Assembly: GCA_004431415.1 (NCBI GenBank) | Contig: QPMI01000452.1 | Location: 310,001-374,000, forward strand | Direction of reading: 5' to 3' | Length of the DNA stretch: 64,000 nt | Origin: Cyanophora paradoxa CCMP329 | Taxonomy: Eukaryota; Plantae; Glaucophyta | Shown: positions 13,497 to 32,110 of the stretch, piece after piece | How the letters are laid out: each line of letters opens with the position of its first letter | How positions within the stretch are numbered: the stretch's first letter is position 1 | Notes under the pieces: model-generated | The model's database searches: none | Seen by the model: only the letters and a program-made list of their open reading frames with translations | Told to the model about the DNA's origin: nothing | Program-made: the position numbers and the translations under genes

Positions 13497-13858
13497 TCAA
13501 TCGTAGATGGGGACGGACCCACCGAAAGGCTCGCGCCAAATGGGGCATGTTCCCGCCCCGCCGGCGAGACGCTGGACGCAGGCGGCGCAGACGACGTGCC
13601 CGCAGGGGTGCAGGAGCCGCCGCTCCCCCCGCTCCTTCTCATGTAGACACACCTGCTGGCCCAGCATCAAGCAGGCCAACTGCCGCTGGCTCAGACTGCG
13701 GCGCACCGGGCACTCGAATCGGTTGAGCGCAGCGGCCCGCGCGGCGATCCGCAGCTCCTCCACGCGCGCCAAGGCCGCCTTCAGCCGCTCGGCCGCCGCC
13801 GCGAGCTCCGCCTCGCCCCAGGGCCGGCCGCTGGGCGCGCCGCCAGCGCTGCCGGCCT
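13497..13858 (-). pseudogene. 3' RING fragment, copy 2
   Basis: ORF 13497..13772 encodes ..HPCGHVVCAACVQRLAGGAGTCPIWREPF. Confidence 0.85.
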
Positions 13859-14345: not shown

Positions 14346-15331
14346 TCACTTCATGCTCGACTCCGTCGCCGCCGCCGCCGCCTTCAGGCCCCGGCGCGTG
14401 CACGCCACGCGCCTCAAGTCCCTCCCACTGGTGCCCGTGAGCACAATTCTTTGTTGGGCCGCAGACAGCACCTGCGCGACAGCTTGACGACCTGCAACGG
14501 GTTCAGGAACAAGACAATATACTTCATACGCTTGCAATATACTTCATACGCTTATAATTAGATGGATTGCGCACCAAGAGCTCCCGCTCTGCCCGCCGCT
14601 GCCGCTGCTGCAGTTGCCGCTGCCGCCTCCTCCCGCGCTCGCTGCGCATCCTCTGCGGCGCAATCAGAGCGCGAACGCAAACAGCAACGTCCTTAAGCAG
14701 CGCGCCTTCGGATGTGAGCGCGCGCTGTTCGGCTCGCCGCGCCTCCTCCTGTGCTCGCCGGATTTCCTCTGTCGCACCATCAGAGCGCGAACGCAAACAG
14801 CAACGGGAAAATAAGCAGCGCGCCTTCGGATGTGAGCGCGCGCTGTTCGGCTCGCCGCGCCTCCTCCTGTGCTCGCCGGATTTCCTCTGTCGCATCGATA
14901 TCATCAGAGCGCGAACGCAAACAGCAACGGGTAAATAAGCAGCGCGCCTTCGGATGCGAGCGCGCGCTGTTCGGCTCGCCGCGCCTCCTCCCGTGCTCGC
15001 CGATTATCATCTGTCGCACCATCAGAGCGCGAACGCAAACAGCAACGGGTAAATAAGCAGCGCGCCTTCAGATGCAAGCGCGCGCTGTTCGGCTCGCCGC
15101 GCCTCCTCCTGTGCTCGCCGGATTTCCTCTGTCGCATCATCAGAGCAAGAAGGTTGGAGCGCGTGCGGGCGCGCATGCGTGCGAACCTACAGCGATAAAG
15201 CAAGCCTACTGTGAAGTCAGAACAAGCATGCAGGAAGGCAGGGGCGGTCGCACCACACGATCTATAGCTTGTGAATTTGGCACTTCAACTGGATTCGGGA
15301 AGAGAAACCAGAACTCGTCGGCGAGCGACAT
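14346..15331 (-). CDS. Putative spliced coiled-coil protein, copy 2
   Basis: Copy of 6772-7757. Confidence 0.45.
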
Positions 15332-15735
15332 CTAAGCTGGACGATGCCGCCGAGCGCTTCCGAGTCTCCAAAGAAGCGCGTTTGGCACTCCTCGATGCTT
15401 TGTCCGCAACCCGGGCGACCCCCAAACAGCCTTGCAGCCGTAAAGAGACTTCAAACAGTTGGCTGGGGGGGTACACAAGATCCTTACGGATGTGCCCCTG
15501 ATCCGCCTGCGCGATCTCCGCACCCGGCCACTCCGTCGCCTGTGTGCCTTGAATGACGGGACGGGCAGCGTGCGAGCTCAATCGAGGACACCCGCAAGCG
15601 GCGGGGCCCTCGGAGGGGTCCCCGGGCCCCGCCGCGCTGAGTGCGCGAGCGCTGCTTCTTGTAGACGTCCCCGAAGCGCCCAGCCCGCGCGTAGCTAAGC
15701 GGCCACTTCGGCAGGTTGGAGGCGCGGCGTTGGAG

Positions 15736-17071
15736 ATGGCTTCTAGGAGACCGCTCCCGCCGACGACGCTGCGGCGTCGATCACCGTCGCAACGTCGAGC
15801 GCGGGCCCCTCCCACGACCGCGCGAGCTCCGCCGCCGCCGCGGCCGCCGCGCCGACGGCCTCCGGCTCTACCCTCCCGCCCGCCTCCTCCCACTCGCCGC
15901 CGGAGCCGCCGGCGCCGCCCTCCGCGCCCGCGACGGTCCGGAAGAGCCCCTTCCGCGCGGTGGCGGTCCCCGCGCCGCCCCGCCGGCGCTGACGCTCACG
16001 GGGCGGCATGGGCGGGGCGGCAGAGTCGCAGGCGGTGTCGGAGTCGATCGGTCTGCTGCGGACGATGCGGCTGTACGGCGGTGCCGGCCCGCCGCACGCC
16101 GACGGCGCCCTGTACCGCGCGCCTCGCACAGCTTCGGCAGTGCAGTTGAGCACATCCGCCGCGGCCGCCCCTTCTGGGACCCCGGTCCGTGCAATCAAAG
16201 GCTTAGGCGCCGGTCTCAGACGCTGGACCGGTGCAGACGCCCGTCCCAGACGCCCGCCGCTGCCCGCCGCCCGCCGCTGCCCGCCGCCCGCCTTGCCCGC
16301 CGCCGGAAGCTGAGCGCTTTGGGCGCAGCCTGGCAGCGGTGAAGCCGCGGCAGTCGCTGGACCTTGGCGGGCTCGTCCGCACGCGCACCCGCCGCCTCGC
16401 CGACCTCGACCCCGTCAAGTCTCGGTGCACTCGCCCGCCCGCTCGAGCCTGCGCGGGAATAACTGAGACGGCGCGCGATGGGCGGGCAGGCCGCGCCCCA
16501 TCCGCAAGATCATAGACGACTTCCCCGAAATGTGGCGCCTGGCTCGCATGGGTGCGGCCCGTTCCCGTACCCCGTGATCGCCTCCAACGACGTACCCCCG
16601 CAGACGAGACGGTACGGACCCGCTCGGGGTACGTGCCCCACGAGATGCTCAACGAGGCGAGCGCCCGTACCCCTTTTCGGCTCCATCCCCGTTCCTGATG
16701 CCTGTACCCCTGCTCGCCCTCCCGCGCAGCTGCGGGGCATGTTCCACAAAGAGTCCGTACCCCTTCCTAGCCAACTCCGTTACCCCCCGGCCCCTCACCC
16801 GTACCCCCCAGGTACTACATCCCCGTGCGGAACATCTTCCGCTACTACGCGCACCTCGATGGCGCCAAGGGGCGTGTACCCCTCCCCCTTCCCTTGCTTC
16901 CCCTACCCCTGACCCGGCCGGCGGGGGTACAGGTGAAGGCGATCGCGGTGCGGGCGCGGCACGGCGACGGGGAGGAGATGTACACGGTCAACAAGCGGGG
17001 TACACCCCCACCCCGCCTCCCCACCGCCCCCCCCTGCCTGCCGCTCACTTGATCTCCTTTCTTCCCCTCAG
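15736..17071 (+). pseudogene. Third tandem copy of the deleted multi-exon gene
   Basis: Near-identical to 577-1913. Confidence 0.7.
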
Positions 17072-17905
17072 CAGGGATAGCTGGGAGCCTCTGCAGCGAC
17101 GGGTCGTTCCGGGAGAGTCTGAAGGGGCCCGCCCATAGCTGGGGGAGAGTCCCCCTCAGCAGGGATAGCTGGGAGCCTCTGCAGCGACGGGTCGGGCCCG
17201 GTCGCTCCCAGGAACCGGAGCCCGGGTCACTCGCTTCCAGGAGTCCGGCGCCGGGGCAGGCGCTCGGGGTACATGTGAGGGCGATCGCGGGTCTGAGGAC
17301 CCGCCGCTCAACCGCGCCCAAGGTGCGCGTGCCCGCCCCGGCCTCCTCCGCTCCCCCTTCCCAGGCGCGGGCGCGGGCGCTGGCGCCCCCCTTCGTCTCC
17401 CTGCCCGCCTTCGCTCGAGCGGAGAGGGGGTAAGGTTCGCCGTCCCCGGGGCCCCGCCGTTGAAGTAGAGCGTCCAAATCTGTGATTCTTTCAAAATTGC
17501 AAGAGGAGAGCATTATTAAAATTATTATGTGTACATGTGCTCCTTTCATTGCAAAAGAGGAGGGCACGGGCATGTACAGCTGGCGAGGCGGGGGCGGCGG
17601 GGGTGGCGGGGCGCCCGGGGGTGCACGTGGAAGGGGCACGGGCCTGGCGGCGCCCAGGTTACTCTTATCTGAGATTTCGAAGCTGAGATTTCAAGCTTCG
17701 AACGACCTTCTGCTACACATGCATTTACATTGAATTTCATCTTCGTAGGGAAACGCTTGGAACTATCAACAAATCATGAGCTTCGACAGGCCGCCTGCAC
17801 GCGCTGCCCACTGTTGCAGCTAGCTGCTGACTTCCGAACGAACGTGGAACGCCGCGGGCGCTCCGGACCGGGCAGGGCTTGGGGCCTCAGAGGCGGCGGG
17901 CGGGC

Positions 17906-20177
17906 CTACGCGAGCGGGGCCGGGAGCTCCTCGAACGGCTGCGCATGAGCGCCCGTCAGCGGCCGGCAGCGGGCGCCTCGTAAGGGAGTAAAGGAAGGCG
18001 GACGGCGGCGGCGGCGACGGCGGCGTCGATGAGGGCGCAGAGTTTCGCGATGGCCGCCTGCTGGTACATGTTGCTGAAGAAGACCGCTACGGACCGCCGG
18101 GCCGTCAGCGGTGCGCGGGCGGGCGCTGTGGCTTCGGAGGGCGCGCGGGGCGGACCGTTGTGGCGGGAGAAGGCGGCCATGTCAGCGGGGAGGCCGTCAC
18201 AGGAGGGGAACCGCTCGTTCGGGTCGTCCACAAACGGAACGATCGCCTTGCCCAGGCGAAGGCTTTCCACGACCTCCTTCCGCACCCTGCGCCCCGCCCC
18301 GCCCCGCGATCGGCGGGGGCGGCGAGGCTTGCGGGGCCGCCGGGCGGTCGGGCGGCACCAGTCGGTGGAGAGAGCGGCCGAGGGCGCCTTGTCTTCGAAG
18401 CAGCGTTTCAGGGTGCCCGGCGTGAGCACGAAGACTGCGCCTGGGCGTCAGGAGAGAAGCGACGCGGCGGGGTGGGGTTTGGGGGTTGGGGGGGGGGGGG
18501 GGGGAGGGGGGAGGGGAGAGGGGGGAGAGGGGGGAGAGGGGGGGAGAGGGGGGGGAGGGGGGGCGGGAGCGGCGGGGCCGCCGTGGGGCATGCCGTCGCA
18601 GCAGGAGGCGCGGAGGCTCTCGAGAATCTTCGAGTCGAAGACGCCGCCCTGGAGGGTCTCCAGGTCGAAGAAGACCTTGTAGCTGTTGCTGTATCAGGGG
18701 CACGGGGTACGGAGCCGGCGCCGGCGGCCGCACCCGGCCTTGTCCAGCGCCTCGCGCACGAACGCCGCGAGGTGGTTCCTCCCGTCCAGCCGCCGGTACG
18801 TGATGCTGCGCGGGCCTCAGGGCGAGCGAGCGAAAGGAGCGCGGAGGGGGCACGGCGGCGCACAAGGCGTGGAACTCGTAGCCAGGGGGCAGCGGCGGGA
18901 CGCGGCGGGAGGCGGCGCTCTGTGCGCCGCTCTCCTTTGCGAGCTCGGCAATCTGGCGAAAGGAGCTCAGCCAAGTCCAGAGCGGCGGGCGGAGAGCGGG
19001 CGCACCTCCACGAGGAGCTTCTTGCGGACGAGGCCCGACTCGACGCCGAGCTCCCGCTGCAGGTCTGCGTCGGCTAGAGCGAGCAGCATCTTGCCGTCGA
19101 CGCGGTGCCTCTCGAAGGCCGGGGCGAGGTCCCCGAGCTCGACGGACCGCAGCCACTCGCACACGTCCGCCACGCGCATGCCCCGCGGGTCCCGCGCCGC
19201 CGCGGCGGGGGCGGGCGAGGTAGCAGCAGCAGCAGCAGGCGCCCCGGCGATGGATGACGCTGAGCCCGCTGTTAATGAGCTCGCATCGGAAGGCAGAGCA
19301 GCAGGAGCGGGGCGTGCGCGGACCGGGGACCGAAGGGGCCGCGGCGGCGGGAGGGCGCGGGGGCTACGGGAAAAGGTGAGGGGCAGCCGCGTGCATGGGG
19401 AAGCGCAGTGGCACGCACCGCCGCAGGGGGCGCGGCTCCAGCGGAGGGCGCCGCTGCAGAACGGAATCGAGTCAAAGGCTGGCGGAGCGTGTACAAGAAA
19501 GTGTACGGACCGGAGGTACGGACCGGTGGGCCGGCGGGAGGATTCGGGACGGGCGGCGCCCCGGGGACGGGCTGCGGCGGGAGGTGAAGGGCGGAGCGCG
19601 GGGCTGGCGGGGCGGGGCGCACCGCGGCGGCGGGAGTGGGTGCGAGGAGAGAGCGGAGGTAGGGCACGACGACGGCGCACTGAGCAGCACCGTTGTTAGG
19701 GGCTCCTTCGTTGACGGCGCGGCGGATGTGCTCGGGCCATGAGTCCACGACGGGGTTGCCGTGCACGTACAGCTCCTTCAGGGCGGCGAGGCGGCCGATC
19801 TCCGGTGGCAGCGCCGTCAGCCGGTTATTGGCCGCGCTCAGGCACTGCAGGGCGGCGAGGCGGCCGATTTCTGGTGGCAGCGCCGTCAGCTGGTTCTCGT
19901 TCACGACCAGCTCCTTCAGGGAGGCGAGGCGCCCGATCTCCGGCGGCAGCGCCGTCAGCTGGTTTTTGTTAAACCGCAGCCGCTCCAGGTTCGTCAGCTT
20001 GGCGAGCTCGGCGCCCGGGATGCGTGTGAGCTTGCTCGTTATAAGCCAGAGCACGCGGATGTTCTGCGGCCCCGCATGCGCGATCCAGTCCGCCGGCCAC
20101 TCCGTCCGCGGCTCCCCCGACAGGTCCAGCACCCCCCCCTCCGGGCTCCACCTCTGTCTGCTGCTGCCGCCGCCCAT
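17906..20177 (-). CDS. LRR-SAM-TIR protein, copy 3
   Basis: The LRR ORF 19272..20177 is identical to copy 1. SAM and TIR exons are present; the indels seen lie mainly in introns. Confidence 0.88.
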
Positions 20178-21069
20178 GTCTACGGGGCGGTCAGGGCAGA
20201 AGCGCGCCGCGGGGAGCGCGCCTCCCGCCGCGCCCCCACCACCCCCGCCGCGTCGCGTCGCCTGGTGGGAGCCGAAAGCGGCCTAGCACGCTCCTTGGCG
20301 CCCGTACGCGTGCGAAGAAGAGCGAAGCGATTCCTAGGTTCTAGACCGGGATTCGCCCAGCGGCAACTTACGGCAATCCAGGCTAGGCGCCCTCCAGGCG
20401 TCGCGCACCTTCGACTTCGGAGGATATCGATCGCCTTGCCGCAGCAGAGCCAAATTTAGGAACCGAAGGAGTTCGCGCGCTGTCTGCTGGCTGCTCGCCT
20501 GCTGCGCGGTGCACGAAGCTACGACTGAACAGGGAGCGGGCAGGGCGAGAGGCGGGCGATGCGCATGCCAGAAAACCAACGTTAACGACAAACGAAGCTC
20601 CTGGGTCGACTGTACCCCGCCCCTACTCAGATGAGTCAGATCTGGATGTCGACGTCTCGCGATCGGATTGCGCGCTGCCAGGCTGTATACGTATACGTAG
20701 ATACGTAGATAGTACTAGAGACAGATAGGCCTAGGAGGAACTTCGAATTCGGATCGGGAATGCAGCCGGCAGGCCCGGCACCAGTGCGCTTCAAATCGCT
20801 CTAAATTACTACAGCTTGAACTTCATCCTTGAACAATCATTGAACAATCATTGAATGAATTCAAACTACTTGAACTTGAACTACAGCGCCTACTTGGGCG
20901 GGCTGGGGCTCTAGCTAAAGCTGTAGTTAGCCCGGAGGCCTGCAGCATGGAAGAAAGGAAGTGTGGAAGATGTGCAGTGGCCGGCTGCGGTCGCTAGCTA
21001 AAGCAACAGAAAGCCTGAGACCGCAAACAGAGCCGGAGCTGCGACGCGCGGCGCCGCGCCGCGGGGCTC

Positions 21070-22323
21070 TCAATCGTAGATGGGACGGACCCACCGAAAG
21101 GCTCGCGCCAAATGGGGCATGTTCCCGCCCGCCGGCGAGACGCTGGACGCAGGCGGCGCAGACGACGTGCCCGCAGGGTGCAGGAGCCGCCGCTCCCCCC
21201 GCTCCTTCTCATGTAGACACACCTGCTGGCCCAGCATCAAGCAGGCCAACTGCCGCTGGCTCAGACTGCGGCGCACCGGGCACTCGAATCGGTTGAGCGC
21301 AGCGGCCCGCGCGGCGATCCGCAGCTCCTCCACGCGCGCCAAGGCCGCCTTCAGCCGCTCGGCCGCCGCCGCGAGCTCCGCCTCGCCCCAGGGCCGGCCG
21401 CTGGGCGCGCCGCCAGCGCTGCCGGCCTCGTACAGCGCCAGCCGCTCGTCGGCCCGAAGACGCGCGCCTCCGCCTCCGCCAGCCGCCCGCGCAGCGCCTC
21501 CGCCTCCGCCGCCGCCTGCCGCTCCCGCCGCGCCGCCGCCTCGAGCTCCGCCCGCGCCTCCGCCCGCTCCGCCGCGAGGGCCGCCGCCCGCGCCTCGGCG
21601 AGGGCGGCGGCGCGCGCCTCCTCCCGCAGGCGCGCGGCCGCCGCCTCCAGCTGCCCCGCCACCGCCTCCAGGGGCAGTGGGCAATCGGGGGCGGCTCCCG
21701 CTGCGGCTCGCGCCGGGAGGTTGGAGGGCGGGCGGGAGCCGGGGAGGCTGGAGCGGCGGGGGGGTGCGAGGCAAGCGGGGCGGAGGGAACGGGCTGTCGC
21801 GGATGTGAGGGGCGGGACGCGAGGGGGGGGGGGGGGGGGGGGGGGGGGAGCCCGCCGCGGGGGCGGGGTAGAGGAGGGAGAGGAGGTAGGGCTCGACGGC
21901 GGTGAGCTGGGCTTGACCATTCCCAGGTGCGGCGATGACGGCGCGGCGGACGGGCTCGGGCCACGAGTCCACGACGGGGTTGCGTTCGACGTACAGCTGC
22001 TCCAGGGCGGCGAGGCGGCCGAGCTCCGGCGGCAGCGCCGTCAGCCGGTTGTCTCGCACGTACAGTTCCTTCAGGTTCGCGAGGCGGCCAGTCTCCGGCG
22101 GCAGCTCCATCAGTTGGTTGCACTGCAACCACAGCGTCTCCAGGTTCGTCAGCTTGGCGAGCTTGGCGCCCGGGATGCGCGTTAGCTTGTTCCCGTCGAG
22201 GTCGAGCACGCGGATGTTCTCCGGCCCCGCGCGCGCGATCTCCGCTGCCGGCCACTCCGTCCGCCCCTCCGGATCCCCCGCCAGGTCCAGCTTCCCCTCT
22301 GCCGGGATCCACCCCCTGCCCAT
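21070..22323 (-). CDS. LRR - coiled coil - RING protein, copy A (frameshifts; last RING Cys replaced by Trp)
   Basis: MGRGWIPAEGKLDLAG..IRVLDLDGNKLTRIPG..LWLQCNQL..LYVRDNRL..LYVERNP, then an Ala/Glu/Arg coiled coil and a RING ending CPIWREP. Confidence 0.75.
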   Translation of the reverse strand: MGRGWIPAEGKLDLAGDPEGRTEWPAAEIARAGPENIRVLDLDGNKLTRIPGAKLAKLTNLETLWLQCNQLMELPPETGRLANLKELYVRDNRLTALPPELGRLAALEQLYVERNPVVDSWPEPVRRAVIAAPGNGQAQLTAVEPYLLSLLYPAPAAGSPPPPPPPPSRPAPHIRDSPFPPPRLPRTPPPLQPPRLPPALQPPGASRSGSRPRLPTAPGGGGGAAGGGGRAPAGGGARRRPRRGAGGGPRGGAGGGAGGARGGGAAGAAGGGGGGGAARAAGGGGGARLRADERLALYEAGSAGGAPSGRPWGEAELAAAAERLKAALARVEELRIAARAAALNRFECPVRRSLSQRQLACLMLGQQVCLHEKERGERRLLHPAGTSSAPPASSVSPAGGNMPHLARAFRWVRPIYD

Positions 22324-23134
22324 GCCTGCGGGGCGGACCCGGGCGGTCAGCGGCAGAAGCGCCCCGCGGGGAGTGCGCCCACGCCCCGCCCGGCGTTTCG
22401 AAGTTCCCCAGCGCTGGGCCGCGCTGGGCTCCAGTCTGAGCTCTGGGTCGCGCCTTCTGACCCTCAACCTGAACCTAACTTCTGCGCCGGACCCGGCGAT
22501 GCCCAACGATAACTTCTGACCCGTACCTATGGCCCAACTTCTGCGCCGGACCCGGCCATGCTCGAAATCGCCCGGCGGCAACTAGCGACAACTAGGGCGT
22601 CGCGCATTTCGATGGATCTCCGTGCCGCAGCGCTAGCAGAGCCGGCGCCAAGCTTGGGAACGAACTTCTGAAGTGATGCGAACCGCAGCGAACCGCTGCG
22701 AACGAAGCGCCGGGGTACAATCGTTTGCCCGCTGCATCAACTTTCATGCGGAGCATCGGCGGCAGGAGATCGTCATCGCAGCAGTAGAGGCCACTTGCAG
22801 CAGTGACTTGCTTGAATCGAGCTTATCCAGCCCGACCTGCGAATCAGAGGCTGCGATAGCGGATCGCGCTCAGCGAGTTTGCGGGCGGAGCGCGTTCGCG
22901 CGTTTGTGGAGATCCTTATCTTTGGAGCTGGAGATCTCATGGCCGGCTGCTTGCCTGCGACGTGACGGGACAGCTTGCGAGCTTAATCGAGGACGCCCGC
23001 AACCGGCCCTGAGCAGGAGCCCCCGCTTGCGTAGTGAGTGCACTGATTCTTGCAGGCGTCCCTGAGGCGCCCAGCCCGCGCGCAGCTAAGCCGCGGCTCC
23101 TGCACTGCAGCAGGTCGGCGGCGCGGCGTTGGCG

Positions 23135-24020
23135 ATGGCTTCTGAGGAGGCCGCCCCGGCCGAGGGGGCGGCGGCGTCGATCGACGTCGCTCCGTCGAGC
23201 CCTGGTCCCTCCCACGACCGCGCGAGCACCGCCCTCGCCGCGGCCGACGCGCCAACGGCCGCAGCCGCTGCCCTCCCGCCCGCCTCCTCCCACGCGCCGC
23301 CGGAGCCGCCGGCGCCGCCCTCCGCGCCCGCGACGGCCCGGCGAGCCCCTTCCGCGCGGGGGCGTCCCCCGCGCCGCCCCGCCGGCGCTGACGCTCACGC
23401 GGGCGGCGGAGGCGCCGGGGCCGCAGGGGCCGCCGCCGTCCCTCTCGCTACCGGCCTTCCCGGCGGACTTCCGCGCGGCGACCGCACCGGCGCAGCTCAG
23501 CCACCGCAGCTCCCGTGCGCCCCGCCCCGCCCCTCCCCGCCCCGCCCCGGCGCCCCGCCAGGAGCCGCGGGCCAGCGGATCCGCTGGGGTCTCGCCTCAC
23601 GGGGCGGGGCGGGGCGGCAGAGTCGCAGGCGGTGTCGGAATCAATCGGTCTGCTGCGGACGATGCGGCTGCGCGGCGGCGCCGGCCCGCCGCACGCCGAC
23701 GGCGCCCTGTACCTGCGCCACGGCGAAATGGCCCTCAACAAGCGCATGTGGAAGGTCCGCGCCGGGCGCGCCCAGGGCAGCCCCCTTCCCGTCATGCTCT
23801 GAGCGCCGTGGCGCAGGACGGGGCGGAGCAGCTGCTGGTGTGCCTGGCGTACAACGACGGCGACCCGCGCGCCTCGCACAGCTTCGGCAGCGCCGTGGAG
23901 CATATCCGCCGCGACCGCCCCTTCTGGGATCCCGGTCCGCCAGTTCAAAGGCTTAGGCGCCGGTCCCGCTGGCCGCTGAGCGCTTTCGGCGCAGTGGTGA
24001 AGCCGCGGCAGTCGCTGGAC
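23135..24020 (+). pseudogene. 5' truncated-off copy of the multi-exon gene (first exons only)
   Basis: MASEEAAPAEGAAAS.. is homologous to 27074. Homology ends after VKPRQSLDF, in GCCGGGATA microrepeats. Confidence 0.65.
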
Positions 24021-24238
24021 TTTAGCCGGGATAGCCGCAGTGGTGAAGCCGCGGGATAGCCGGTATAGCCGGGATAGCTGGGATAGCCGTTCCAGGAGAG
24101 TCCCAAAAGGGGCCCGCCCACCGTCCTGTCCCCTGCAGCCGCTGAGCTGCCGCAGCGCCCCCATTCCCCTCAAGGAGCCCGGCAAGCGGCGTCTTGGGGG
24201 GTCGGGGCCGGGGCCGGTCTAGGGCCCCTCGGGAGGGC

Positions 24239-24404
24239 CCTACGGGGCACCCCTGGCCCCTCTTTCACTGGGGCCGGCGGAGTGGGCCGGGGCGGCGGGC
24301 CCGGGCGGCGGGGCTCGGGCCTACGGGGCACCCCGGGCCCCTCTTTCACTGGGGCCGGCGGAGTGGGCCGGGGCGGCGGGCCCGGGCGGCGGGGCTCGGG
24401 CCTA
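24239..24404. repeat. 2 x 81 bp tandem duplication
   Basis: TACGGGGCACCCC..TTTCACTGGGGCCGGCGGAGTGG.. starts at 24241 and 24322. Confidence 0.9.
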
Positions 24405-24976
24405 TATATAGACGGGTCGTGGCGGGCTGGCCCGTAGTGGAAGGGCCCGCCCCCATTTCTAGGAAGGAGTCGCTCCCAGAGGACCCGGTGGCTCCCAGGA
24501 GTCCGGGACCGGGGCAAGCGCTTGGGTCGGATTCCGGAGGTTCCCCCCACCCCCACCCCCCCCCCCCACCCACCCCTCCCCCCCCGGCCCCCCCCCGCCA
24601 CCCCGCCCCCCCACGCCTCGCCCCGCCTCGCCTCGCCAGCACCGTGGGGCCGAGGCGGCAGGCCAGGGGAGCCCCTCTCTTCCCCCGCGGGGGCGGCGGT
24701 CCCTAGATGTCTCGAGATCGGATGGTACCATCTAATTAAAGCGATGTCGGGCGGCGGTACCATCTACATTACGCTCGAGAGCTTTCAACGGCTCTGTATT
24801 CGATTGAACTTGATCCTCGAACAATGAACCTTCGTGCCTTCGTACATTCCTTCATGATCATATATATACGCAATGAACACGAGGTTGGAAAGAGGGGCGG
24901 CGACACAAGGGATGCATGCACACGGCTGAGACCGCGCTCGACTCGCTGCCACTCGCGGCGCCGAGTCGCGGCGAGC

Positions 24977-26185
24977 TCAATCGTAGATGGGGACGGACCC
25001 CCCGAAGGGCTCGCGGCAAATGGGACACGTTCCCGCCCCGCCGGCAAGCCGCTGGACGCAGGCCGCGCAGACGACGTGCCCGCAGGGGTGGAGGAGCCGC
25101 CGCTCGCCCCGCTCCTTCTCGTCCAGGCACACCTGCCGGCCCAGCATCAAGCGGGCCGGCGGCAGCTGGATCAGACTGCGACGCGCGCAGCTGCGCACCG
25201 GGCACTCGAATCGGTTGAGAGCGGCGGCCCGCGCTGCGATCCGCAGCTCCTCCACACGCGCCAGGGCCCCTTTCAGCCGCTCGGCCGCCGCCGCGAGCTC
25301 CGCCTCGCCCCAGGGCCCGCCGCCGGGCGCGCCGCCAGCGCTGCCGCCCTCGTACAGCGCCAGCCGCTCCTCGGCCCGGAGACGCGCGGCCTCCGCCTCC
25401 GCCAGCCGCCCGCGGAGCTTTGTCGCCTCCGCCGCCGCCCGCCGCTCGCGCTGCGCCGCCGCCTCGAGCTCCGCCCGCGCCTCCTCCCGCAGCCGCGCGG
25501 CCGCCGCCTCCAGCTGCGCCGCCACGGCCTCCAGGGGCAGTGGAGAATCGGGGGCGGCTCCCGCTGCGGCCCGTGTCGGGAGGTTGGAGGGCGGGGCGGG
25601 AGCCGGGGAGGCCGGAGCAGCGGGGGGGGGGGGGTGCGAGGCAAGCGGGGCGGAGGGGGTGGGCTGTCGCGGGATGTGAGGGGCGGAACGCGAGGGGAGG
25701 GGGGGGGGGGGGGGGTAGCCCACTGCGGGGGCGGGGTAGAGGAGGGAGAGGAGGTAGGGCTCGACGGCGGTGAGCTGGGCTTGACCATTCCCAGGTGCGG
25801 CGATGACGGCGCGGCGGACGGGCTCGGGCCACGAGTCCACGACGGGGTTGCGTTCGACGTACAGCTGCTCCAGGGCGGCGAGGCGGCCGATCTCCGGCGG
25901 CAGCGCCGTCAGCCGGTTGTCGCGCACGTACAGTTCCTTCAGGTTCGCGAGGCGGCCAGTCTCTTGCGGCAGCTCCATCAGTTGGTTGCTCTGCAGCCAC
26001 AGCGTGTCCAGGTTCGTCAGCTTGGCGAGCTCGGCGCCCGGGATGCGCGTGAGCTTGTTCCCGTCGAGGTCGAGCACGCGGATGTTCTCCGGCCCCGCCG
26101 CCGCGATCTCCGCCGCCGGCCACTCCGTTCGCCCCTCCCCCGCCAGGTCCAGCTTCCCCTCTGCCGCGATCCAACCCCTGCCCAT
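24977..26185 (-). CDS. LRR - coiled coil - C3HC4 RING E3 ubiquitin ligase, copy B (intact)
   Basis: Four LRRs, a Pro linker and a coiled coil. Removing the in-frame intron 25133-25198 (GTGCGC..GGCAG) gives CPVCLDE..HPCGHVVCAACV..CPICREP. Confidence 0.9.
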   Translation of the reverse strand: MGRGWIAAEGKLDLAGEGRTEWPAAEIAAAGPENIRVLDLDGNKLTRIPGAELAKLTNLDTLWLQSNQLMELPQETGRLANLKELYVRDNRLTALPPEIGRLAALEQLYVERNPVVDSWPEPVRRAVIAAPGNGQAQLTAVEPYLLSLLYPAPAVGYPPPPPLPSRSAPHIPRQPTPSAPLASHPPPPAAPASPAPAPPSNLPTRAAAGAAPDSPLPLEAVAAQLEAAAARLREEARAELEAAAQRERRAAAEATKLRGRLAEAEAARLRAEERLALYEGGSAGGAPGGGPWGEAELAAAAERLKGALARVEELRIAARAAALNRFECPVRSCARRSLIQLPPARLMLGRQVCLDEKERGERRLLHPCGHVVCAACVQRLAGGAGTCPICREPFGGSVPIYD

Positions 26186-27073
26186 GCCTGCGGGGCGGTC
26201 AGCGGCAGAAGCGCATTCCGAAGTTCCGGCCTGCGGCCCGGCCGACCCGAGCCGAGCCGAGCCCAGGGCGGCTCGATGCGGCGCCGAGCTTCGATGCGGC
26301 ACTAGCGGTAGCGGCACTTCGATGGATCTCCTTGCTGCAGCAGAGCCAAGCTTCCGGAACAGGCCGCTCGGAGCCGGCGCTGCAGCTGGCTGCTTGGCGC
26401 TAGGAGCTAGAACGCTAGGAGGAGCAAGCGCGCGCGGCGGCCCGGCGGGCGATGATCCAAAACTGCATCGATATCGATATCGCTGCTGGGCGATGGTCCA
26501 AAACTGTAGCGATGGCTGCTTGGGTGAGCAAGCGCGCGCGGCGGGCGATATTCAACTTCTGAAGTGTTGCGAACGAGTTGCGCGTTCTGCGAAGCTGCGA
26601 ATTCGAAGTGTTCTGAAGCTGAAGTGTTGCGAACCGCAGCGAGCCGCTGCGAACCGCAGCGAACGAAGCGCCAGGGTACAGTCGTTTGCCAACGCTGCAT
26701 CCACTTTCACGCGGAGCACCGGCGGCAGGAGATCGTCATCGCAGCAATAGAGGCCACTTGCTTGAATCGAGCTAAGCCAGCCCGGCCCGCGATAGCGGCT
26801 CAACGCTCAGCGAAATTGCGGGCGGGGCGAGTACGCGCGTGTGTGGTGTGCACACGCCCGACGGGATCTCGAAAGTTTGAGATCGCATGGCCGCCTGCTT
26901 GCCTGCGACGTGACGGGACAGCTTACGAGCCTAATCGAGGCGCCCGCAACCGGCCCTGAGCAGGAGCTCCCTCTTGCGTAGTGAGTGCACTGCTTCTTGT
27001 AGACGTCCCTGAAGCGCCCAGCCCGCGCGTAGCTAAGCCGCCGCTTCTGCAGGTCGGCGGCGCAGCATCCGCG

Positions 27074-30000
27074 ATGGCGTCTGAGGAGGCGGCCCAGGCC
27101 GACGGCGCGGCGGCGCCGATCGACGTCGCCGCGTCGAGCGCGGGCCCCTCCCACGACCGCGCGAGCACTGCCCCTGCCGTGGCCGCCGCGCCAACGGCCT
27201 CCGCCTCCTCCCTCCCGCCAGCCTCCTCCCACGCGCCACCAGAGCCGCCGGCGCCGCCCTCGGCGCCCGCGACGGCCCCAGCGAGCCCCTTCCGCGCGGA
27301 GGCGGCCGCCGCGCCGCCCGCGCCGGCGCTGACGCTCACGCGGGCGGCGGAGGCGCCGGGACCGCCGGGCCGCCCCGCCCGCTCGCTACCGGCCTTCCCG
27401 GCGGACTTTCGCGCGGCGACCGCACCGGCGCAGCTCAGCCGCCGCAGCTCCCGTGCGCCCCGCCCCGCCCCGGCGCCCCGCCAGGAGCCGCGGGCCAGCA
27501 GGGGCCGCCGGGACCTCACGGGGCGGGGCGGGGCGGCAGAGTCGCAGGCGGTGTCGGAGTCGATCGGGCTGCTGCGGACGATGCGGCTGCGCGGCGGCGC
27601 CGGCTCGCCGCACGCCGACGGCGCCCTGTACCTGCGCCACGGCGAAATGGCCCTCAACAAGCGCATGTGGAAGGCCCGCCCCGGGCGCGCCCTGGGCCGC
27701 TCCGTCCCCGCCCTGCTCTGAACGCTGCGGCGCAGGACGGGGCGGAGCAGCTGCTGGTGTGCCTGGCGTACAACGACGGCGACCCGCGCGCCTCGCACAG
27801 CTTCGGCAGCGCCGTGGAGCACATCCGCCGCGACCGCCCCTTCTGGGATCCCGGTCCGCCAGTCCCAGCCACTAGACCGGCGCCGATCGAGCGCAGCCGC
27901 CCGCCGGGCCCGCCGGCGGCCGCTGAGCGCTTTCGGCGCAGTGGTGAAGCCGCGGCAGTCGCTGGACTTTGGCGGGCTCGTCCGCACGCGCACCCGCCGC
28001 CTCGCCGACTTGGATCCCGTCAAGGCCCGGTGCGGCTGTCTGCCCGCTCGGCACCGCGCGGGGATCGCTGAGACGGGGCGCGCCGGGTGGGCAGGCCGCG
28101 GCCCATCCGCAAGATCATAGACGACTTCCCCGAAATGTGGCGCCTGGCTCGCATGGGTACGGCAACTTTCCGTATACCGGATTCGCCTCCGACGCCGTAC
28201 CCCCGCAGACGAGACGGTGCGGACCCGCTCCGGGTACGTGCCCCACGAGGAGCTCAACGAGGCGAGCGCCCGTACCCCTTTCCGGCTCCATCCCCGTTCC
28301 TGATGCCTGTACCCCTGCTCGCCCTCCCGCGCAGCTGCGGGGCATGTTCCACAAAGAGTCCGTACCCCTTCCTCCCCAACTCTTCCCCCCCCCCGGCCCC
28401 TTACCCGTACCCCCCAGGTACTACATCCCCGTACGGAACATCTTCCGCTACTACGCGCGCCTCGATGGCGCCAAGGCGCGTGTACCCCTCCCCTCCTTCC
28501 GCTCCCATACCCCTGACCCGGCCGGCGGGGGTACAGGTGAAGGCGATCGCGGTGCGGGCGCGGCGCGTCGACGGGGAGGAGATGTACACGGTCAACAAGC
28601 GGGGTACACCCGCACCCCTGCCTCCCCACCGTCCCCGCCTGCCTGCCGCTCACCTGATCTCCTTTCTCCCCCCCCCTCAGAGTTCGACGTCTTCGTGCAG
28701 GACTGCCAGCTGCTCTGCCGCGAGCTCACCGCCCCCAAGGCGCGCCCCTGGGAGGGGTATGGGATAGCCTAGTTCCGAGGTTTACCGGATGCCGGGCCTC
28801 GTATCCCCCTGCCCTCCTCTTTATTTAGTTTGTACCCCCAAGGCGCGCCCCTGGCAGGGGCTCGGCCGCAGAGGCTGGGCTGTCGCCGGGTCCTAGGGTC
28901 CGGGCGGTCCGAGGCGGGCTCATGTCTAGGCTCGGACTTTGGGTTTTGGGCCGCCCCACCTGACGACCGTTCCTCCCACCCCACCATTCCCCTTCCTCAG
29001 GTGAACATCGTGTTCATTTCGGCGAACAAGGACCCCCCCAAGGCCCTCGTCGAGTCCATGGCCCGCGCGGTGCGGTACCCGCCCTCCTCTTCTTCCCCCC
29101 CCCCCTCCACCCTCCTCATTCTCGCCCCAGGGCGCCCCGATCGAGGTGGAGGGAAACAACAAGCTGACGATGGTGCGCGTCCTTGAATCGTCCGCCGGTA
29201 CTAAGCGGGATTACCCTCTCCTCCTCTCCTCCTTTCCTTCTAGAGCCCTAAAGGCGCCAAAGGACGCGTCCCCCGGGATCATGGGCGAGCGCTACAGCCT
29301 TCGCCCTCGCCGCCGTAGCGCCTAGCGCTGCTAGCGCTACGCACCCGCCTAGGCGAGCGGCGAGCCCATTGCTGCTCCCGCGGCCGCCGTCCCGCCGCTG
29401 CGTCCTTGGATCCCGCTTAGCCACTAAGCCGCTACTAAGCCGCTACTAAGCCGCGTAGCTTCTGGGCTTCTTCTAGGCCGCCCCGCCTCGCCGATCCTCG
29501 CCGCCCCATGCCTCTCTGATGATCCTCGGGGGATCATGGGCAAGCGCCCCGGCCTAGGCTCCCGTCGCTGCTCCCGCGGCCGCCGCCCCGCCGCCGCTTC
29601 CCTGAACCTAGCTAAGCTACTAAGCCGCCCCGCTGCTTTCCTTCTACCCTCCGCCCCGCCTCGCCTCCCACTCAACCACTAAGCCGCTTCTCCTCCCCCT
29701 CCGTTCCTTTCTTTCTAAGCCGCTTCTCCTCTTTCTAAATCTAACGGCCTTTCCCCGCGCAGGTGCTGCCGGAGTTCATGAACGCCGTCGTCCGCCTCGC
29801 CAACCTCCGCTACGTCCGTACCCCCCGGCCCCGCCGGAGGATCTCGGCTTAGCTCTTAGACCCTATCCCCCCGCCCCGGCCCCGCCCCCGCCCGGCCCCC
29901 GCCCCTCTCAACCCCCCGGCCCCGGCCCCTGAGGAGAGCCTCGGGCAGGCGCGCGTGGGGAAGACGGCGGCCCCGGCCCCGGCCCCGCCGCATAAGCTTC

Positions 30001-31048
30001 TTAGCTGGAGACCCATAAGCTCTTATGCTTCTAAGCTTCATAAGCTTAAGAGCATAAGGACGGAACCCATAAGCCCTTAAGCCTCCCGCACCCGCCCCTG
30101 AGGAGAGCCTCGGGCAGGCGCGCGTGGGGAAGACGGTGGCGGAGCGCTTCGTGATGCTCATGGAGCGCGACGTCCTCCCCAACGCCAGGTGGTGCGCGGT
30201 TGCTTAAGATTCATAGAAAAGGGGGAGGGCCGAGAGAAATCTCTGTTGCACCGAGAGAAATCTCTCTAGTCTGCGCCGGGACGGCGGTGGTGCGCCCGCC
30301 GGCCCGGGCCCGGGGCTCCTTTAGCTTCAGGGGCGCGCCGGGTCCTCCCCCACCGGCCCTCGACCTAGAACGTCTCGGGTCCTCCCCACCGGCCCTCGAC
30401 CTAGAACGCCCTCGACACCGGCGGCGGCCCTTGCGCGGGGCTCTGCGGTGGCTCCGACCCGATGCCGTAGAGCGGCTCCGGCGCCCTCGAGCGCGGGGCT
30501 CGCCTGAGGGCCGCCCGACGGCGCAGGGACGACGTGAGATTGATTGCTAGATTGAGGCGCTGCGCGCCGATATATAACTCTGTGCTAGATCTGACGGCGT
30601 GATCCGCTTGATCCGAGGGCCGGCCGCCCGACGGCCGCCCGAGGCCCGGAAATCCTCCTCTAGACCGCTCATGCTCCTCCTCCTCGGGGCCGCCTCGCCT
30701 GAGGGCCGGCCGGGCGCGCAGGGACGACGTGCAGGAGTTCCGCCGCCTCGTGCAGCGCGGCGCCGTCCTGGTGCGCCCGCCCCTTGCCCCCAGGAACCCG
30801 CTCCAGTCCTAGGGGTGAGATCTGGATCTGGGGGAACCCCCTTCTGCTTCTTCTCCTTCTCCATAAAACTATCTTGCATCATATCTACCTATCTATCTAT
30901 CTCACATCTATTTTCGCGCCAGGTTCCGCAACCCTCCCTCGCAGACGACGGCGCGCCCCGCTGCCCTACCCCTCCCCCCGTCCGCCCCCCCTACCCCCGC
31001 TGACGTTCCCCCCCCCCAGACGTGACCATCGCGGACGACCACGCCAAG
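27074..31048 (+). CDS. Multi-exon host protein of unknown function (helical, possibly EF-hand-like C-terminal domain); 3' end unresolved
   Basis: Exon-like pieces bounded by splice sites: MASEEAAQ.., AESQAVSE.., DGAEQLLVCLAYNDG.., YYIPVRNIFRYYARL, EFDVFVQDCQLL, VNIVFISANK, VLPEFMNAVVRLANLR, VAERFVMLMERDVLPNAR, DDVQEFRRLV, DVTIADDHAK. Confidence 0.6.
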
Positions 31049-32110
31049 GTGCCCTTGGGCCGCCCCCTCGCCCCCGCCCCGGCCCCGCCTCCGGCCCCCG
31101 GCCCCGCCCCCGCCCCCGCCCCCGCCAGCTAAGGAGGACCTCCCGCAGGCGCGGGTTGGGAACAGCAAGGGCGTTCCGGGCGGACAGCCGGGGCCTCTGT
31201 ATCGGCGGGCCGTTCGGGCCCTGCCGGAGCGAAACCACTCCCCCCGGCCTGCCTACCGCTCACCTGACATCCTCCCTCAGCTCCGGGCCCAGAGCTGACT
31301 CTCGGCTGCTCTGCCCCGGACCTGCCACCGTCCTCACCGCCCTTCAGGAGCCCATCAAGCGGCTTCTTGGGGGGTCGAACCGGGGGCCAGTCTAGGGACC
31401 CAGGAACCCGGGCCCGGGTCGCTCCCAGGCGCCCGGGGCCGGGGCAGGCGCTTGGGGGTACAGGTGGGGACGATCGCGGGTCTGAGGGCCGTCGGCTGCT
31501 CCGCCGCGAGCCCGCCGCTCGCCGCGCCCGAGGTGCGCACGCCCGCCCCGGCCTCCTCTGCTCCCTCCTCCCAAGCGCGGGCGCGGGCGCTGGCGCCCCC
31601 CTTCGTCTCCCTGCCCGCCTTCGCTCGAGCGGAGAGGGGGTAAGGTTCGCCGTCCCCGGAGCCCCGCTGTTGAAGTACAACGTTCAAATCTGTGATTCTT
31701 TCAAAATTGCAAGAGGAGATCATTAAAAAATGAGAGTACCCCCATCGGGGTGGGCCCGCCCTCTTTGCAACCCTCACCTCTCCGGACACACCCCAACCCA
31801 CCCACTCCGACGCCTTCCCAGCCCTCATTCTCCTCCACCCCTCCGCTATGTCTACTGCCCTCCTCTCCCTCTGGTCTACCTCCCCTCCATCCAGCAACCG
31901 CTAGGTAATATCTAACGTCTAGACCAAGCGATCTTGCAAAAGATATAGCAGTGAATTGAGGCGGGCCCCCAAACGCGCCGGTCTGCAGAGACCTCCTAGA
32001 GCTCTCTATCGGAATAAGCTAGACGTGATTGATGTGTACAGAGAAGCTTACTGCCGAAACGCAATCCAGCTCTAGCTTGAGGTCTATCTAGGTGTTAACT
32101 GCGGCTATAG

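What the first reader, a model, noticed from the sequence alone, without database searches (positions are those of the whole stretch)
17906..26185. One LRR sensor cassette, two effectors: a modular immune-receptor family (LRR-SAM-TIR and LRR-CC-RING)
Seen: both gene types begin with the same cassette, with an acceptor just before ATG-GGC, cap RTEWPA..IA.AGP.NIRVL, KLTRIPGAELAKLTNL, and C-cap NPVVDSWPE..RRAV..AQ..V.PYL.SLL. They then switch to different effectors at the Pro-rich linker. The framework is near-identical while the exposed strand positions differ (WLITS, RFNKN, VVNEN, SAANN, YVHGN versus DLDGN, WLQSN/WLQCN, YVRDN, YVERN), and repeat number is 5 versus 4 in 69-nt units. Known: diversification focused on the concave face marks recognition LRRs (NLRs, VLRs), and LRSAM1 is an LRR-CC-SAM-RING xenophagy ligase. 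Inference: a shuffled sensor/effector system pairing ubiquitination with NAD+ depletion.
Basis: partly seen in the sequence, partly recalled or inferred. Interest (0 to 1): 0.85.

Follow-up and report, generated by a model that had tools for sequence, protein, structure and literature searches.

The report
Algal LRR sensor with swappable outputs
The alga Cyanophora paradoxa has an apparently undescribed family of over 40 genes that reuse one leucine-rich-repeat binding module, variable only on its binding face, in front of either NAD-cutting (TIR) or ubiquitin-tagging (RING) tails; this looks like a simple immune-receptor repertoire, but no ligand or function is shown.

Summary
Observation confirmed and extended. 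The window is from the glaucophyte Cyanophora paradoxa. Gene A (17906-20177) is a spliced, transcribed LRR-SAM-TIR gene whose TIR matches only SARM1/TIR-1 among solved structures (E 2e-22; catalytic Glu kept). It lies in three near-identical tandem copies, supported by read depth. B2 (24977-26185) is an intact LRR-coiled coil-RING gene; B1 looks decayed (last zinc Cys is Trp). The same cassette marks about 47 public gene models, all from this species: 8 SAM-TIR (SARM1 type), 13 with other TIRs, 9 RING (plus B2), 1 BTB. Variation is concentrated on the concave strand (3.2 vs 1.3 bits; A vs B dN/dS about 5 vs 0.3). Tail type is random on the cassette tree (RING clade rejected, p=0.009), and one TIR gene and one RING gene share 73 identical residues. 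Best reading (0.55): a cytosolic receptor repertoire without a nucleotide-binding domain, whose outputs both switch on by clustering. Immune function, enzyme activities and any A-B pairing are untested; this locus argues against pairing. The scan had reported the TIR branch on other DNA of this genome; the RING/TIR reuse had only an unfollowed note. No paper found.

The parts
20409..20604 (-). A3 5'UTR exon (a 25-nt stretch of it is shared with the upstream region of B2)
   Evidence: RNA contigs X15 rec 12, X16 rec 21; blastn-short
20180..20408 (-). A3 5'UTR intron, acceptor two bases before ATG
   Evidence: spliced out in two RNA runs
19623..20177 (-). A3 coding exon 1: N-cap, five LRR strands, C-cap; starts MGGGSS (possible myristoylation, inference)
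   Evidence: Pfam LRR; AF2 pLDDT 92
19324..19571 (-). A3 Pro/Ala linker exons 19571-19520, 19453-19419, 19363-19324
   Evidence: frame check; length of a 404-nt RNA contig fits exactly
19006..19268 (-). A3 exon with linker end and single SAM domain
   Evidence: Pfam SAM_1 E 3e-12; RNA contig ends at donor 19005
17906..18952 (-). A3 TIR exons 18952-18864, 18805-18734, 18682-18594, 18434-18359, 18286-18156, 18086-18004, 17938-17906; SARM1-type TIR; one GC-AG intron (18593-18435)
   Evidence: RNA joints; PDB phmmer to SARM1 TIR E 2e-22; frame check
2753..5030 (-). A1, near-identical copy of A3
   Evidence: self-alignment; DNA depth about 3x
10325..12604 (-). A2, near-identical copy of A3 (ends approximate; homopolymer indels probably assembly errors)
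21070..22323 (-). B1: LRR cassette (4 strands), GC-donor intron, coiled coil, RING with last Cys replaced by Trp; probably decayed
25724..26185 (-). B2 coding exon 1: N-cap, four LRR strands, C-cap
   Evidence: Pfam LRR
25199..25663 (-). B2 exon 2: Pro-rich linker, coiled coil, conserved pre-RING helix, first RING Cys
   Evidence: long helices in the model of paralog P0040
24977..25132 (-). B2 exon 3: C3HC4 RING with the remaining seven zinc ligands and linchpin Arg
   Evidence: Pfam zf-C3HC4_3 E 1e-9; alignment A5
5923..6283 (-). RING-only stub of B1 at the triplication junction (unit 1)
13497..13858 (-). RING-only stub of B1 at the triplication junction (unit 2)

Best explanation
A species-specific family of soluble cytosolic receptors. 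One exon encodes a capped LRR solenoid whose frame is kept uniform while the five outward residues of each strand are diversified, giving many binding specificities (pattern shown; ligand binding inferred). Duplication and recombination in the Pro-rich linker behind a shared phase-0 intron, plus conversion between cassettes, join this exon to different tails (decoupled histories shown). The tails are interchangeable because both are switched on by clustering: when LRRs bind a repeated or foreign target, SAM-assisted TIR assembly would cleave NAD+ as in SARM1 (cell death or a nucleotide signal), and coiled-coil-assisted RING dimers would ubiquitinate the target (inferred from SARM1 and dimeric RING ligases). 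The likely role is cell-autonomous defence against viruses, bacteria or their proteins.
For: Intact, spliced, transcribed LRR-SAM-TIR. TIR hits only SARM1/TIR-1 in PDB; Y568, D594, G601, C629, W638, E642, Y687, Q688 equivalents kept (importance of several in PMC8266388). About 47 models, clustered on a few contigs, with variable repeat number and decayed copies. Concave entropy 3.19 vs convex 1.30 bits over 114 units; controls 3.52 vs 3.00. A3 vs B2 concave pN 0.58 vs pS 0.19, Fisher p 4e-5; rest pN 0.07. Variable residues lie on the beta strands of the model. Tail class needs 13 changes on the cassette tree (shuffled mean 12.6); RING clade rejected p-AU 0.009, SAM-TIR clade 0.02; 73 identical residues between g2261 (TIR) and g2263 (RING). 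Both C-cap types occur with SAM-TIR, TIRb and RING. All named tails (TIR, RING, BTB) are cell-death, signalling or ubiquitin outputs. The genome holds Polinton-like elements.
Against: No ligand, activity or infection data. Transcripts come from runs with no recorded challenge, at low depth. SARM1 H685, E686, H640 and D627 equivalents are changed; H685A lowers SARM1 activity. One SAM only, SARM1 has two. B1 vs B2 differ at 2 of 20 concave and 3 of 68 other codons, and A1-A3 are the same, so no fast change among recent copies. The dN/dS rests on one gene pair with uncertain repeat pairing. Unrelated LRR proteins can show the same contrast. Family counts rest on automatic gene models, some of them chimeric (for example P0121). 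The tree has 104 columns and is mostly unresolved.
Confidence: 0.55

Rival explanations
1. Host-protein adaptors, not immune receptors: SHOC2/RSU1-like LRR scaffolds that diversified once to bind different host targets and route them to NAD-derived signalling or to turnover.
For: Closest solved folds include SHOC2 and RSU1; recent copies keep their concave residues; several members end in a CaaX-like signal or start with a possible myristoylation signal.
Against: Such adaptors are usually few and conserved across species, whereas this cap was found only in C. paradoxa among 1.84 billion representatives, with frequent birth and decay.
Confidence: 0.2
2. Mostly turnover without a common function: a recombination-prone GC-rich LRR exon spreads by duplication and gene conversion; apparent swapping is conversion between cassettes, and many copies are pseudogenes.
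For: B1 decayed, RING stubs at duplication junctions, 14 of 47 models without a recognisable tail; conversion alone can scramble a cassette tree.
Against: Frame codons are under purifying selection (dN/dS about 0.3) while concave codons exceed the silent rate; A has 12 coding exons in frame and is spliced; the catalytic Glu is kept in all seven SARM1-type TIRs that contain the motif; tails are limited to a few signalling classes.
Confidence: 0.12
3. The RING and BTB members are regulators of the TIR members: they bind the same ligands or the receptors and ubiquitinate them to keep a toxic NADase in check.
For: TIR and RING members share contigs (tig00000042, tig00000600, tig00020704); g2261 and g2263 have the same first three strands.
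Against: In this locus A and B have different concave faces, and A was amplified without a whole B.
Confidence: 0.13

Closest known systems
SARM1 / C. elegans TIR-1 (ARM-SAM-SAM-TIR NADase)
   Same: SAM then TIR; TIR is the best and only TIR match in PDB (E 2e-22), SAM also matches SARM1 SAM1; catalytic Glu, BB-loop Asp and Gly kept.
   Different: LRR instead of ARM; one SAM; H685/E686/H640 equivalents changed; multigene family with variable sensor; activity untested.
LRSAM1 (LRR-CC-SAM-RING xenophagy E3; PMC8567218)
   Same: N-terminal LRR, coiled coil, C-terminal RING, no membrane segment.
   Different: No SAM in B; no sequence sign of orthology; about ten variable paralogs instead of one conserved gene.
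[quoted passage not shown]
   Same: Algal multigene family, birth and death, diversifying selection on repeat surface, immune role only proposed.
   Different: There each repeat is its own exon and repeats are shuffled on a fixed ROC-COR core; here all repeats sit in one exon, there is no GTPase, and the output domain is what changes.
Plant and fungal NLRs (TIR/CC-NB-LRR)
   Same: Cytosolic, LRR sensor, exchangeable effector domains including TIR, clustered genes (own knowledge).
   Different: No NB-ARC/NACHT switch; order reversed (LRR first, effector last); RING and BTB outputs.
Leptospira 23-residue LRR proteins and agnathan VLRs
   Same: Top fold matches; uniform frame with variable concave strand.
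   Different: Those are secreted or surface proteins without TIR or RING; no sign here of somatic assembly from donor cassettes (not tested).

Membership tests
SARM1 family | SARM1-type TIR with catalytic Glu642 | tested here: met
   alignment, DWVRKE motif
SARM1 family | Tandem SAM domains | tested here: not met
   one SAM
SARM1 family | N-terminal ARM domain | tested here: not met
   exon 1 is LRR
SARM1 family | NAD+ hydrolase activity | not testable with these tools
   needs an assay; H685 equivalent is Asn
LRSAM1 | LRR, coiled coil and C-terminal RING | tested here: met
LRSAM1 | SAM between coiled coil and RING | tested here: not met
   no Pfam hit on B2 exon 2
LRSAM1 | Orthology by sequence | tested here: inconclusive
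   not among hits of cassette or tail searches, which have limited sensitivity
C3HC4 RING E3 ligases | Eight zinc ligands and linchpin Arg | tested here: met
   met in B2; in B1 the last Cys is Trp
NLR immune receptors | Central NB-ARC or NACHT domain | tested here: not met
   none in A, B or the family models scanned
ROCO proteins | ROC-COR tandem after the LRR | tested here: not met
   no Roc or COR family on any C. paradoxa hit
Toll-like receptors | Signal peptide and membrane helix between LRR and TIR | tested here: not met
   linker is Pro/Ala-rich with no hydrophobic helix by inspection; no predictor run
Diversifying recognition LRRs | Variation concentrated on the concave strand | tested here: met
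Diversifying recognition LRRs | Binding of non-self ligand or induction by infection | not testable with these tools
   no challenge data available

The most novel reading that the evidence does not exclude
A glaucophyte alga independently evolved a receptor repertoire without a nucleotide-binding switch, in which one recombining LRR exon supplies specificity to both a SARM1-type NADase branch and a ubiquitin-ligase branch of cell-autonomous immunity.
Probability: 0.4. Interest if true: 0.85.

Novelty: new variant of a known kind. Interest (0 to 1): 0.66.

Why it matters
How single-celled algae recognise pathogens is largely open. This family offers a defined, culturable test case: dozens of variable binding modules wired directly to two kinds of output. 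It places a SARM1-type TIR behind an LRR in an early-branching relative of plants, and suggests that clustering alone, without the ATPase switch of NLRs, can couple sensing to either NAD+ loss or ubiquitination. If the role is not immune, it remains a clear example of domain exchange within one genome.

Tried and rejected
Assembly artefact for the triplication: rejected, DNA depth 150-183 on the unit against 60 on single-copy DNA (contig depth is a rough measure). Frameshifts as real differences between copies: rejected, nearly all are homopolymer indels, and those shown are corrected in short-read contigs. TIR exons searched singly in Pfam and PDB gave nothing, being 24-43 residues. Genomic DNA of paralogs could not be fetched, so codon tests use the window only. 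A viral origin of the RING tail, hinted by Atlas feature scores of 0.90-0.93, was not supported by a scan of viral contigs (the alignment query failed). Fold search of the RING tail gave only generic RINGs, E above 0.001. Pfam of the neighbouring plus-strand gene failed on coordinates. Paper searches found no description of the family; the genome paper never mentions LRR or TIR. Obligate A-B pair: rejected on anatomy.
Full report
Setting. The left half of the window is GC-rich and intron-dense; 33-64 kb is AT-rich and virus-like. Homologs carry gene ids of the form tig..._g..., and the cluster look-up names them EukProt EP00741 Cyanophora paradoxa; the id style matches the genome paper PMC6704402. 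Exon 1 of A3 is 100% identical to public model tig00020704_g13214 (P0017), and B1 matches g13220.

Observation. A3 has 12 coding exons and an open frame of 505 codons. RNA contigs from three studies show the 5'UTR intron and the introns 18593-18435 (GC-AG), 18358-18287, 18155-18087 and 18003-17939, and break at the donors 19622 and 19005. A 404-nt contig runs from the LRR exon for 177 nt and then 227 nt further; my three linker exons (127 nt) plus 100 nt of the SAM exon fill that exactly and give the expected 30-nt overlap with the next contig, so LRR and SAM are very probably on one transcript. No single contig spans the whole gene, and the runs are only guessed to be RNA, though the spliced joints are absent from the DNA run. 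B2 reads as three exons, 360 residues; it lay outside the stretch on which reads were laid, so its splicing is predicted only.

Copies. Positions 1-21428 hold a 7.57-kb unit three times. The copies differ almost only by homopolymer indels, which a short-read run corrects, and depth is about three times that of single-copy DNA. The unit ends inside B1, so units 1 and 2 carry only RING stubs. B1 has Trp at the last zinc ligand (confirmed by the DNA run), AT at the 5'UTR donor, one unresolved frame break near 21460, and no RNA contig with its own letters at 22164-22183; it is probably decaying.

The shared cassette. Homology between A and B covers a 25-nt stretch of the 5'UTR exon, the branch point and acceptor before ATG, the LRR exon and the phase-0 intron that follows, and fades in the Pro-rich linker. 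The model of the A3 cassette (pLDDT 92) has strands at 42-44, 66-68, 89-91, 112-114 and 135-137, an extra cap strand and a helical C-cap; nearest folds are Leptospira LRR proteins, SHOC2, RSU1 and VLRs.

The tails. The TIR of A matches only SARM1 and TIR-1 in the PDB (E 2e-22 for the domain), and the SAM matches SARM1 SAM1. Reading that alignment, equivalents of Y568, D594, G601, C629, W638, E642, Y687 and Q688 are kept; D627, K628, H640, H685 and E686 are changed. Mutation of E642, Y568, H685, D594 or G601 lowers SARM1 activity (PMC8266388). Choanoflagellates have SARM1 homologs with the Glu (PMC6040629), so this TIR type is known outside animals. The B tail is a long helix, a conserved pre-RING helix and a C3HC4 RING, shared by a C. 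paradoxa subfamily.

The family. Three word-based searches and one profile search of 1.84 billion representatives with the N-cap gave 47 C. paradoxa models with the cassette or its clear remains. Every full-cap match that I looked up is from this species. Tails: SARM1-type SAM-TIR 8, TIR type a 6, TIR type b 6 (one fused to myosin), SAM plus TIR type b 1, RING 9 (B2 is extra), pre-RING helix only 1, SAM only 1, BTB 1, none recognised 14. These are automatic models; some are truncated or fused.

Test of focused variation. Over 114 distinct repeat units the five concave positions have mean entropy 3.19 bits and eight other non-frame positions 1.30; in 466 units from unrelated LRR hits the values are 3.52 and 3.00. 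Within proteins, identity is 0.14 against 0.73 (controls 0.18 and 0.32), but 12 of 72 control proteins show a similar contrast. At DNA level, A3 against B2 gives pN 0.58-0.65 at 20 concave codons and 0.07 at 68 others, with pS about 0.19; corrected dN/dS about 5 and 0.3, Fisher p 4e-5 and 0.009. This is one pair, with repeat pairing uncertain. B1 against B2 shows only 2 concave and 3 other changes.

Test of exchange. On a tree of position-homologous cap regions (21 rows, 104 columns; members lacking a called cap left out) tail class needs 13 changes, as many as shuffled labels; a RING clade and a SAM-TIR clade are each rejected (p-AU 0.009, 0.02). g2261 (TIR) and g2263 (RING), neighbours on one contig, share 73 identical residues across cap and first strands. 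Long and short C-caps both occur with SAM-TIR, TIR b and RING (the 'short' call for P0007 there is a pattern error). Cassette and tail thus have separate histories; tail swapping and conversion between cassettes cannot be told apart, and no direction is claimed. A and B are not each other's closest cassettes: the N-cap of B2 is 84-88% identical to several TIR genes and 71% to A3.

Mechanism. Shown: modular anatomy, splicing and transcription of A, focused variation, exchange. Inferred: the concave face binds ligands; ligand-driven clustering activates TIR (helped by SAM) or RING (helped by the coiled coil), which would explain why such different tails are interchangeable. This uses established knowledge of SARM1 and my own knowledge of dimer-activated RING ligases. 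Defence is the most likely purpose (0.55); host adaptors, neutral turnover and RING-as-regulator are the rivals.

Comparison and novelty. It works like SARM1, like LRSAM1 (PMC8567218) and like brown-algal ROCO repertoires (PMC3341825) but fails defining features of each. Paper searches found no description; the library lacks most subscription journals. Earlier notes of this scan describe the TIR branch on other contigs, and one unfollowed note the TIR/RING reuse; I used them as leads only. Class: new variant of a known kind. Interest 0.66.

Method notes. My own spliced model was built only inside a script to check the frame; it was not sent to any search, and the joined search step was left out. 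Window sequence was searched exon by exon or as an unspliced ORF by reference; whole-domain searches used public models by their tool ids (P0017, P0040). The virus-like region was only annotated.

Noticed in passing
window 33000-64000: AT-rich region with two sets of Polinton-like virus genes: two A32-type packaging ATPases (36238, 53088), protein-primed DNA polymerase B (60137), integrase (62408), helicase-like gene (57315), patatin (48262), probable capsid genes; possibly nested or adjacent elements.
   Followed up: partly
window 6283/6284 and 13858/13859: The triplication junction puts TAG directly before the pre-RING helix and RING stub, in phase 0; public model g13217 (P0121) joins an unrelated coiled-coil repeat gene to it. 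Could be a newly made chimeric RING gene; expression not tested.
   Followed up: partly
window 7050-7572 and 14624-15146: Array of 118-nt units that look like repeated small exon plus intron encoding a coiled-coil peptide.
   Followed up: no
window 26981-31400 (+), partial copies near 395-2367, 7980-9940, 15555-17515, 22959-24029: Unidentified multi-exon plus-strand gene that alternates with the LRR genes; only the last copy looks complete.
   Followed up: no
window 20160-20177 and family models: A3 and g2283 begin with a Gly2...Ser6 pattern and lack the C-terminal CaaX-like end seen in g2281, g9984, g4736 and g2261: possible alternative lipid anchors.
   Followed up: no
P0166 (tig00000480_g1309), P0230 (tig00020553_g10595), P0135 (tig00021680_g23034): Same cassette in front of a BTB domain, behind a myosin head with TIR tail, and repeated in a 1407-residue protein ending in two RING-like motifs.
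   Followed up: partly
P0021, P0126, P0127, P0131, P0211: A RING subgroup with the short C-cap carries a basic stretch before the RING that may be a nuclear import signal; P0126 has the tail without LRRs.
   Followed up: no
window 18087-18400 (laid contigs): RNA contigs of a close SAM-TIR paralog (letters fit g1884, P0101) lie at two to three times the depth of A in runs X15 and X16; contig depth is a poor measure of expression.
   Followed up: no
window 24239-24404: Two near-perfect 81-nt tandem copies between B1 and B2.
   Followed up: no
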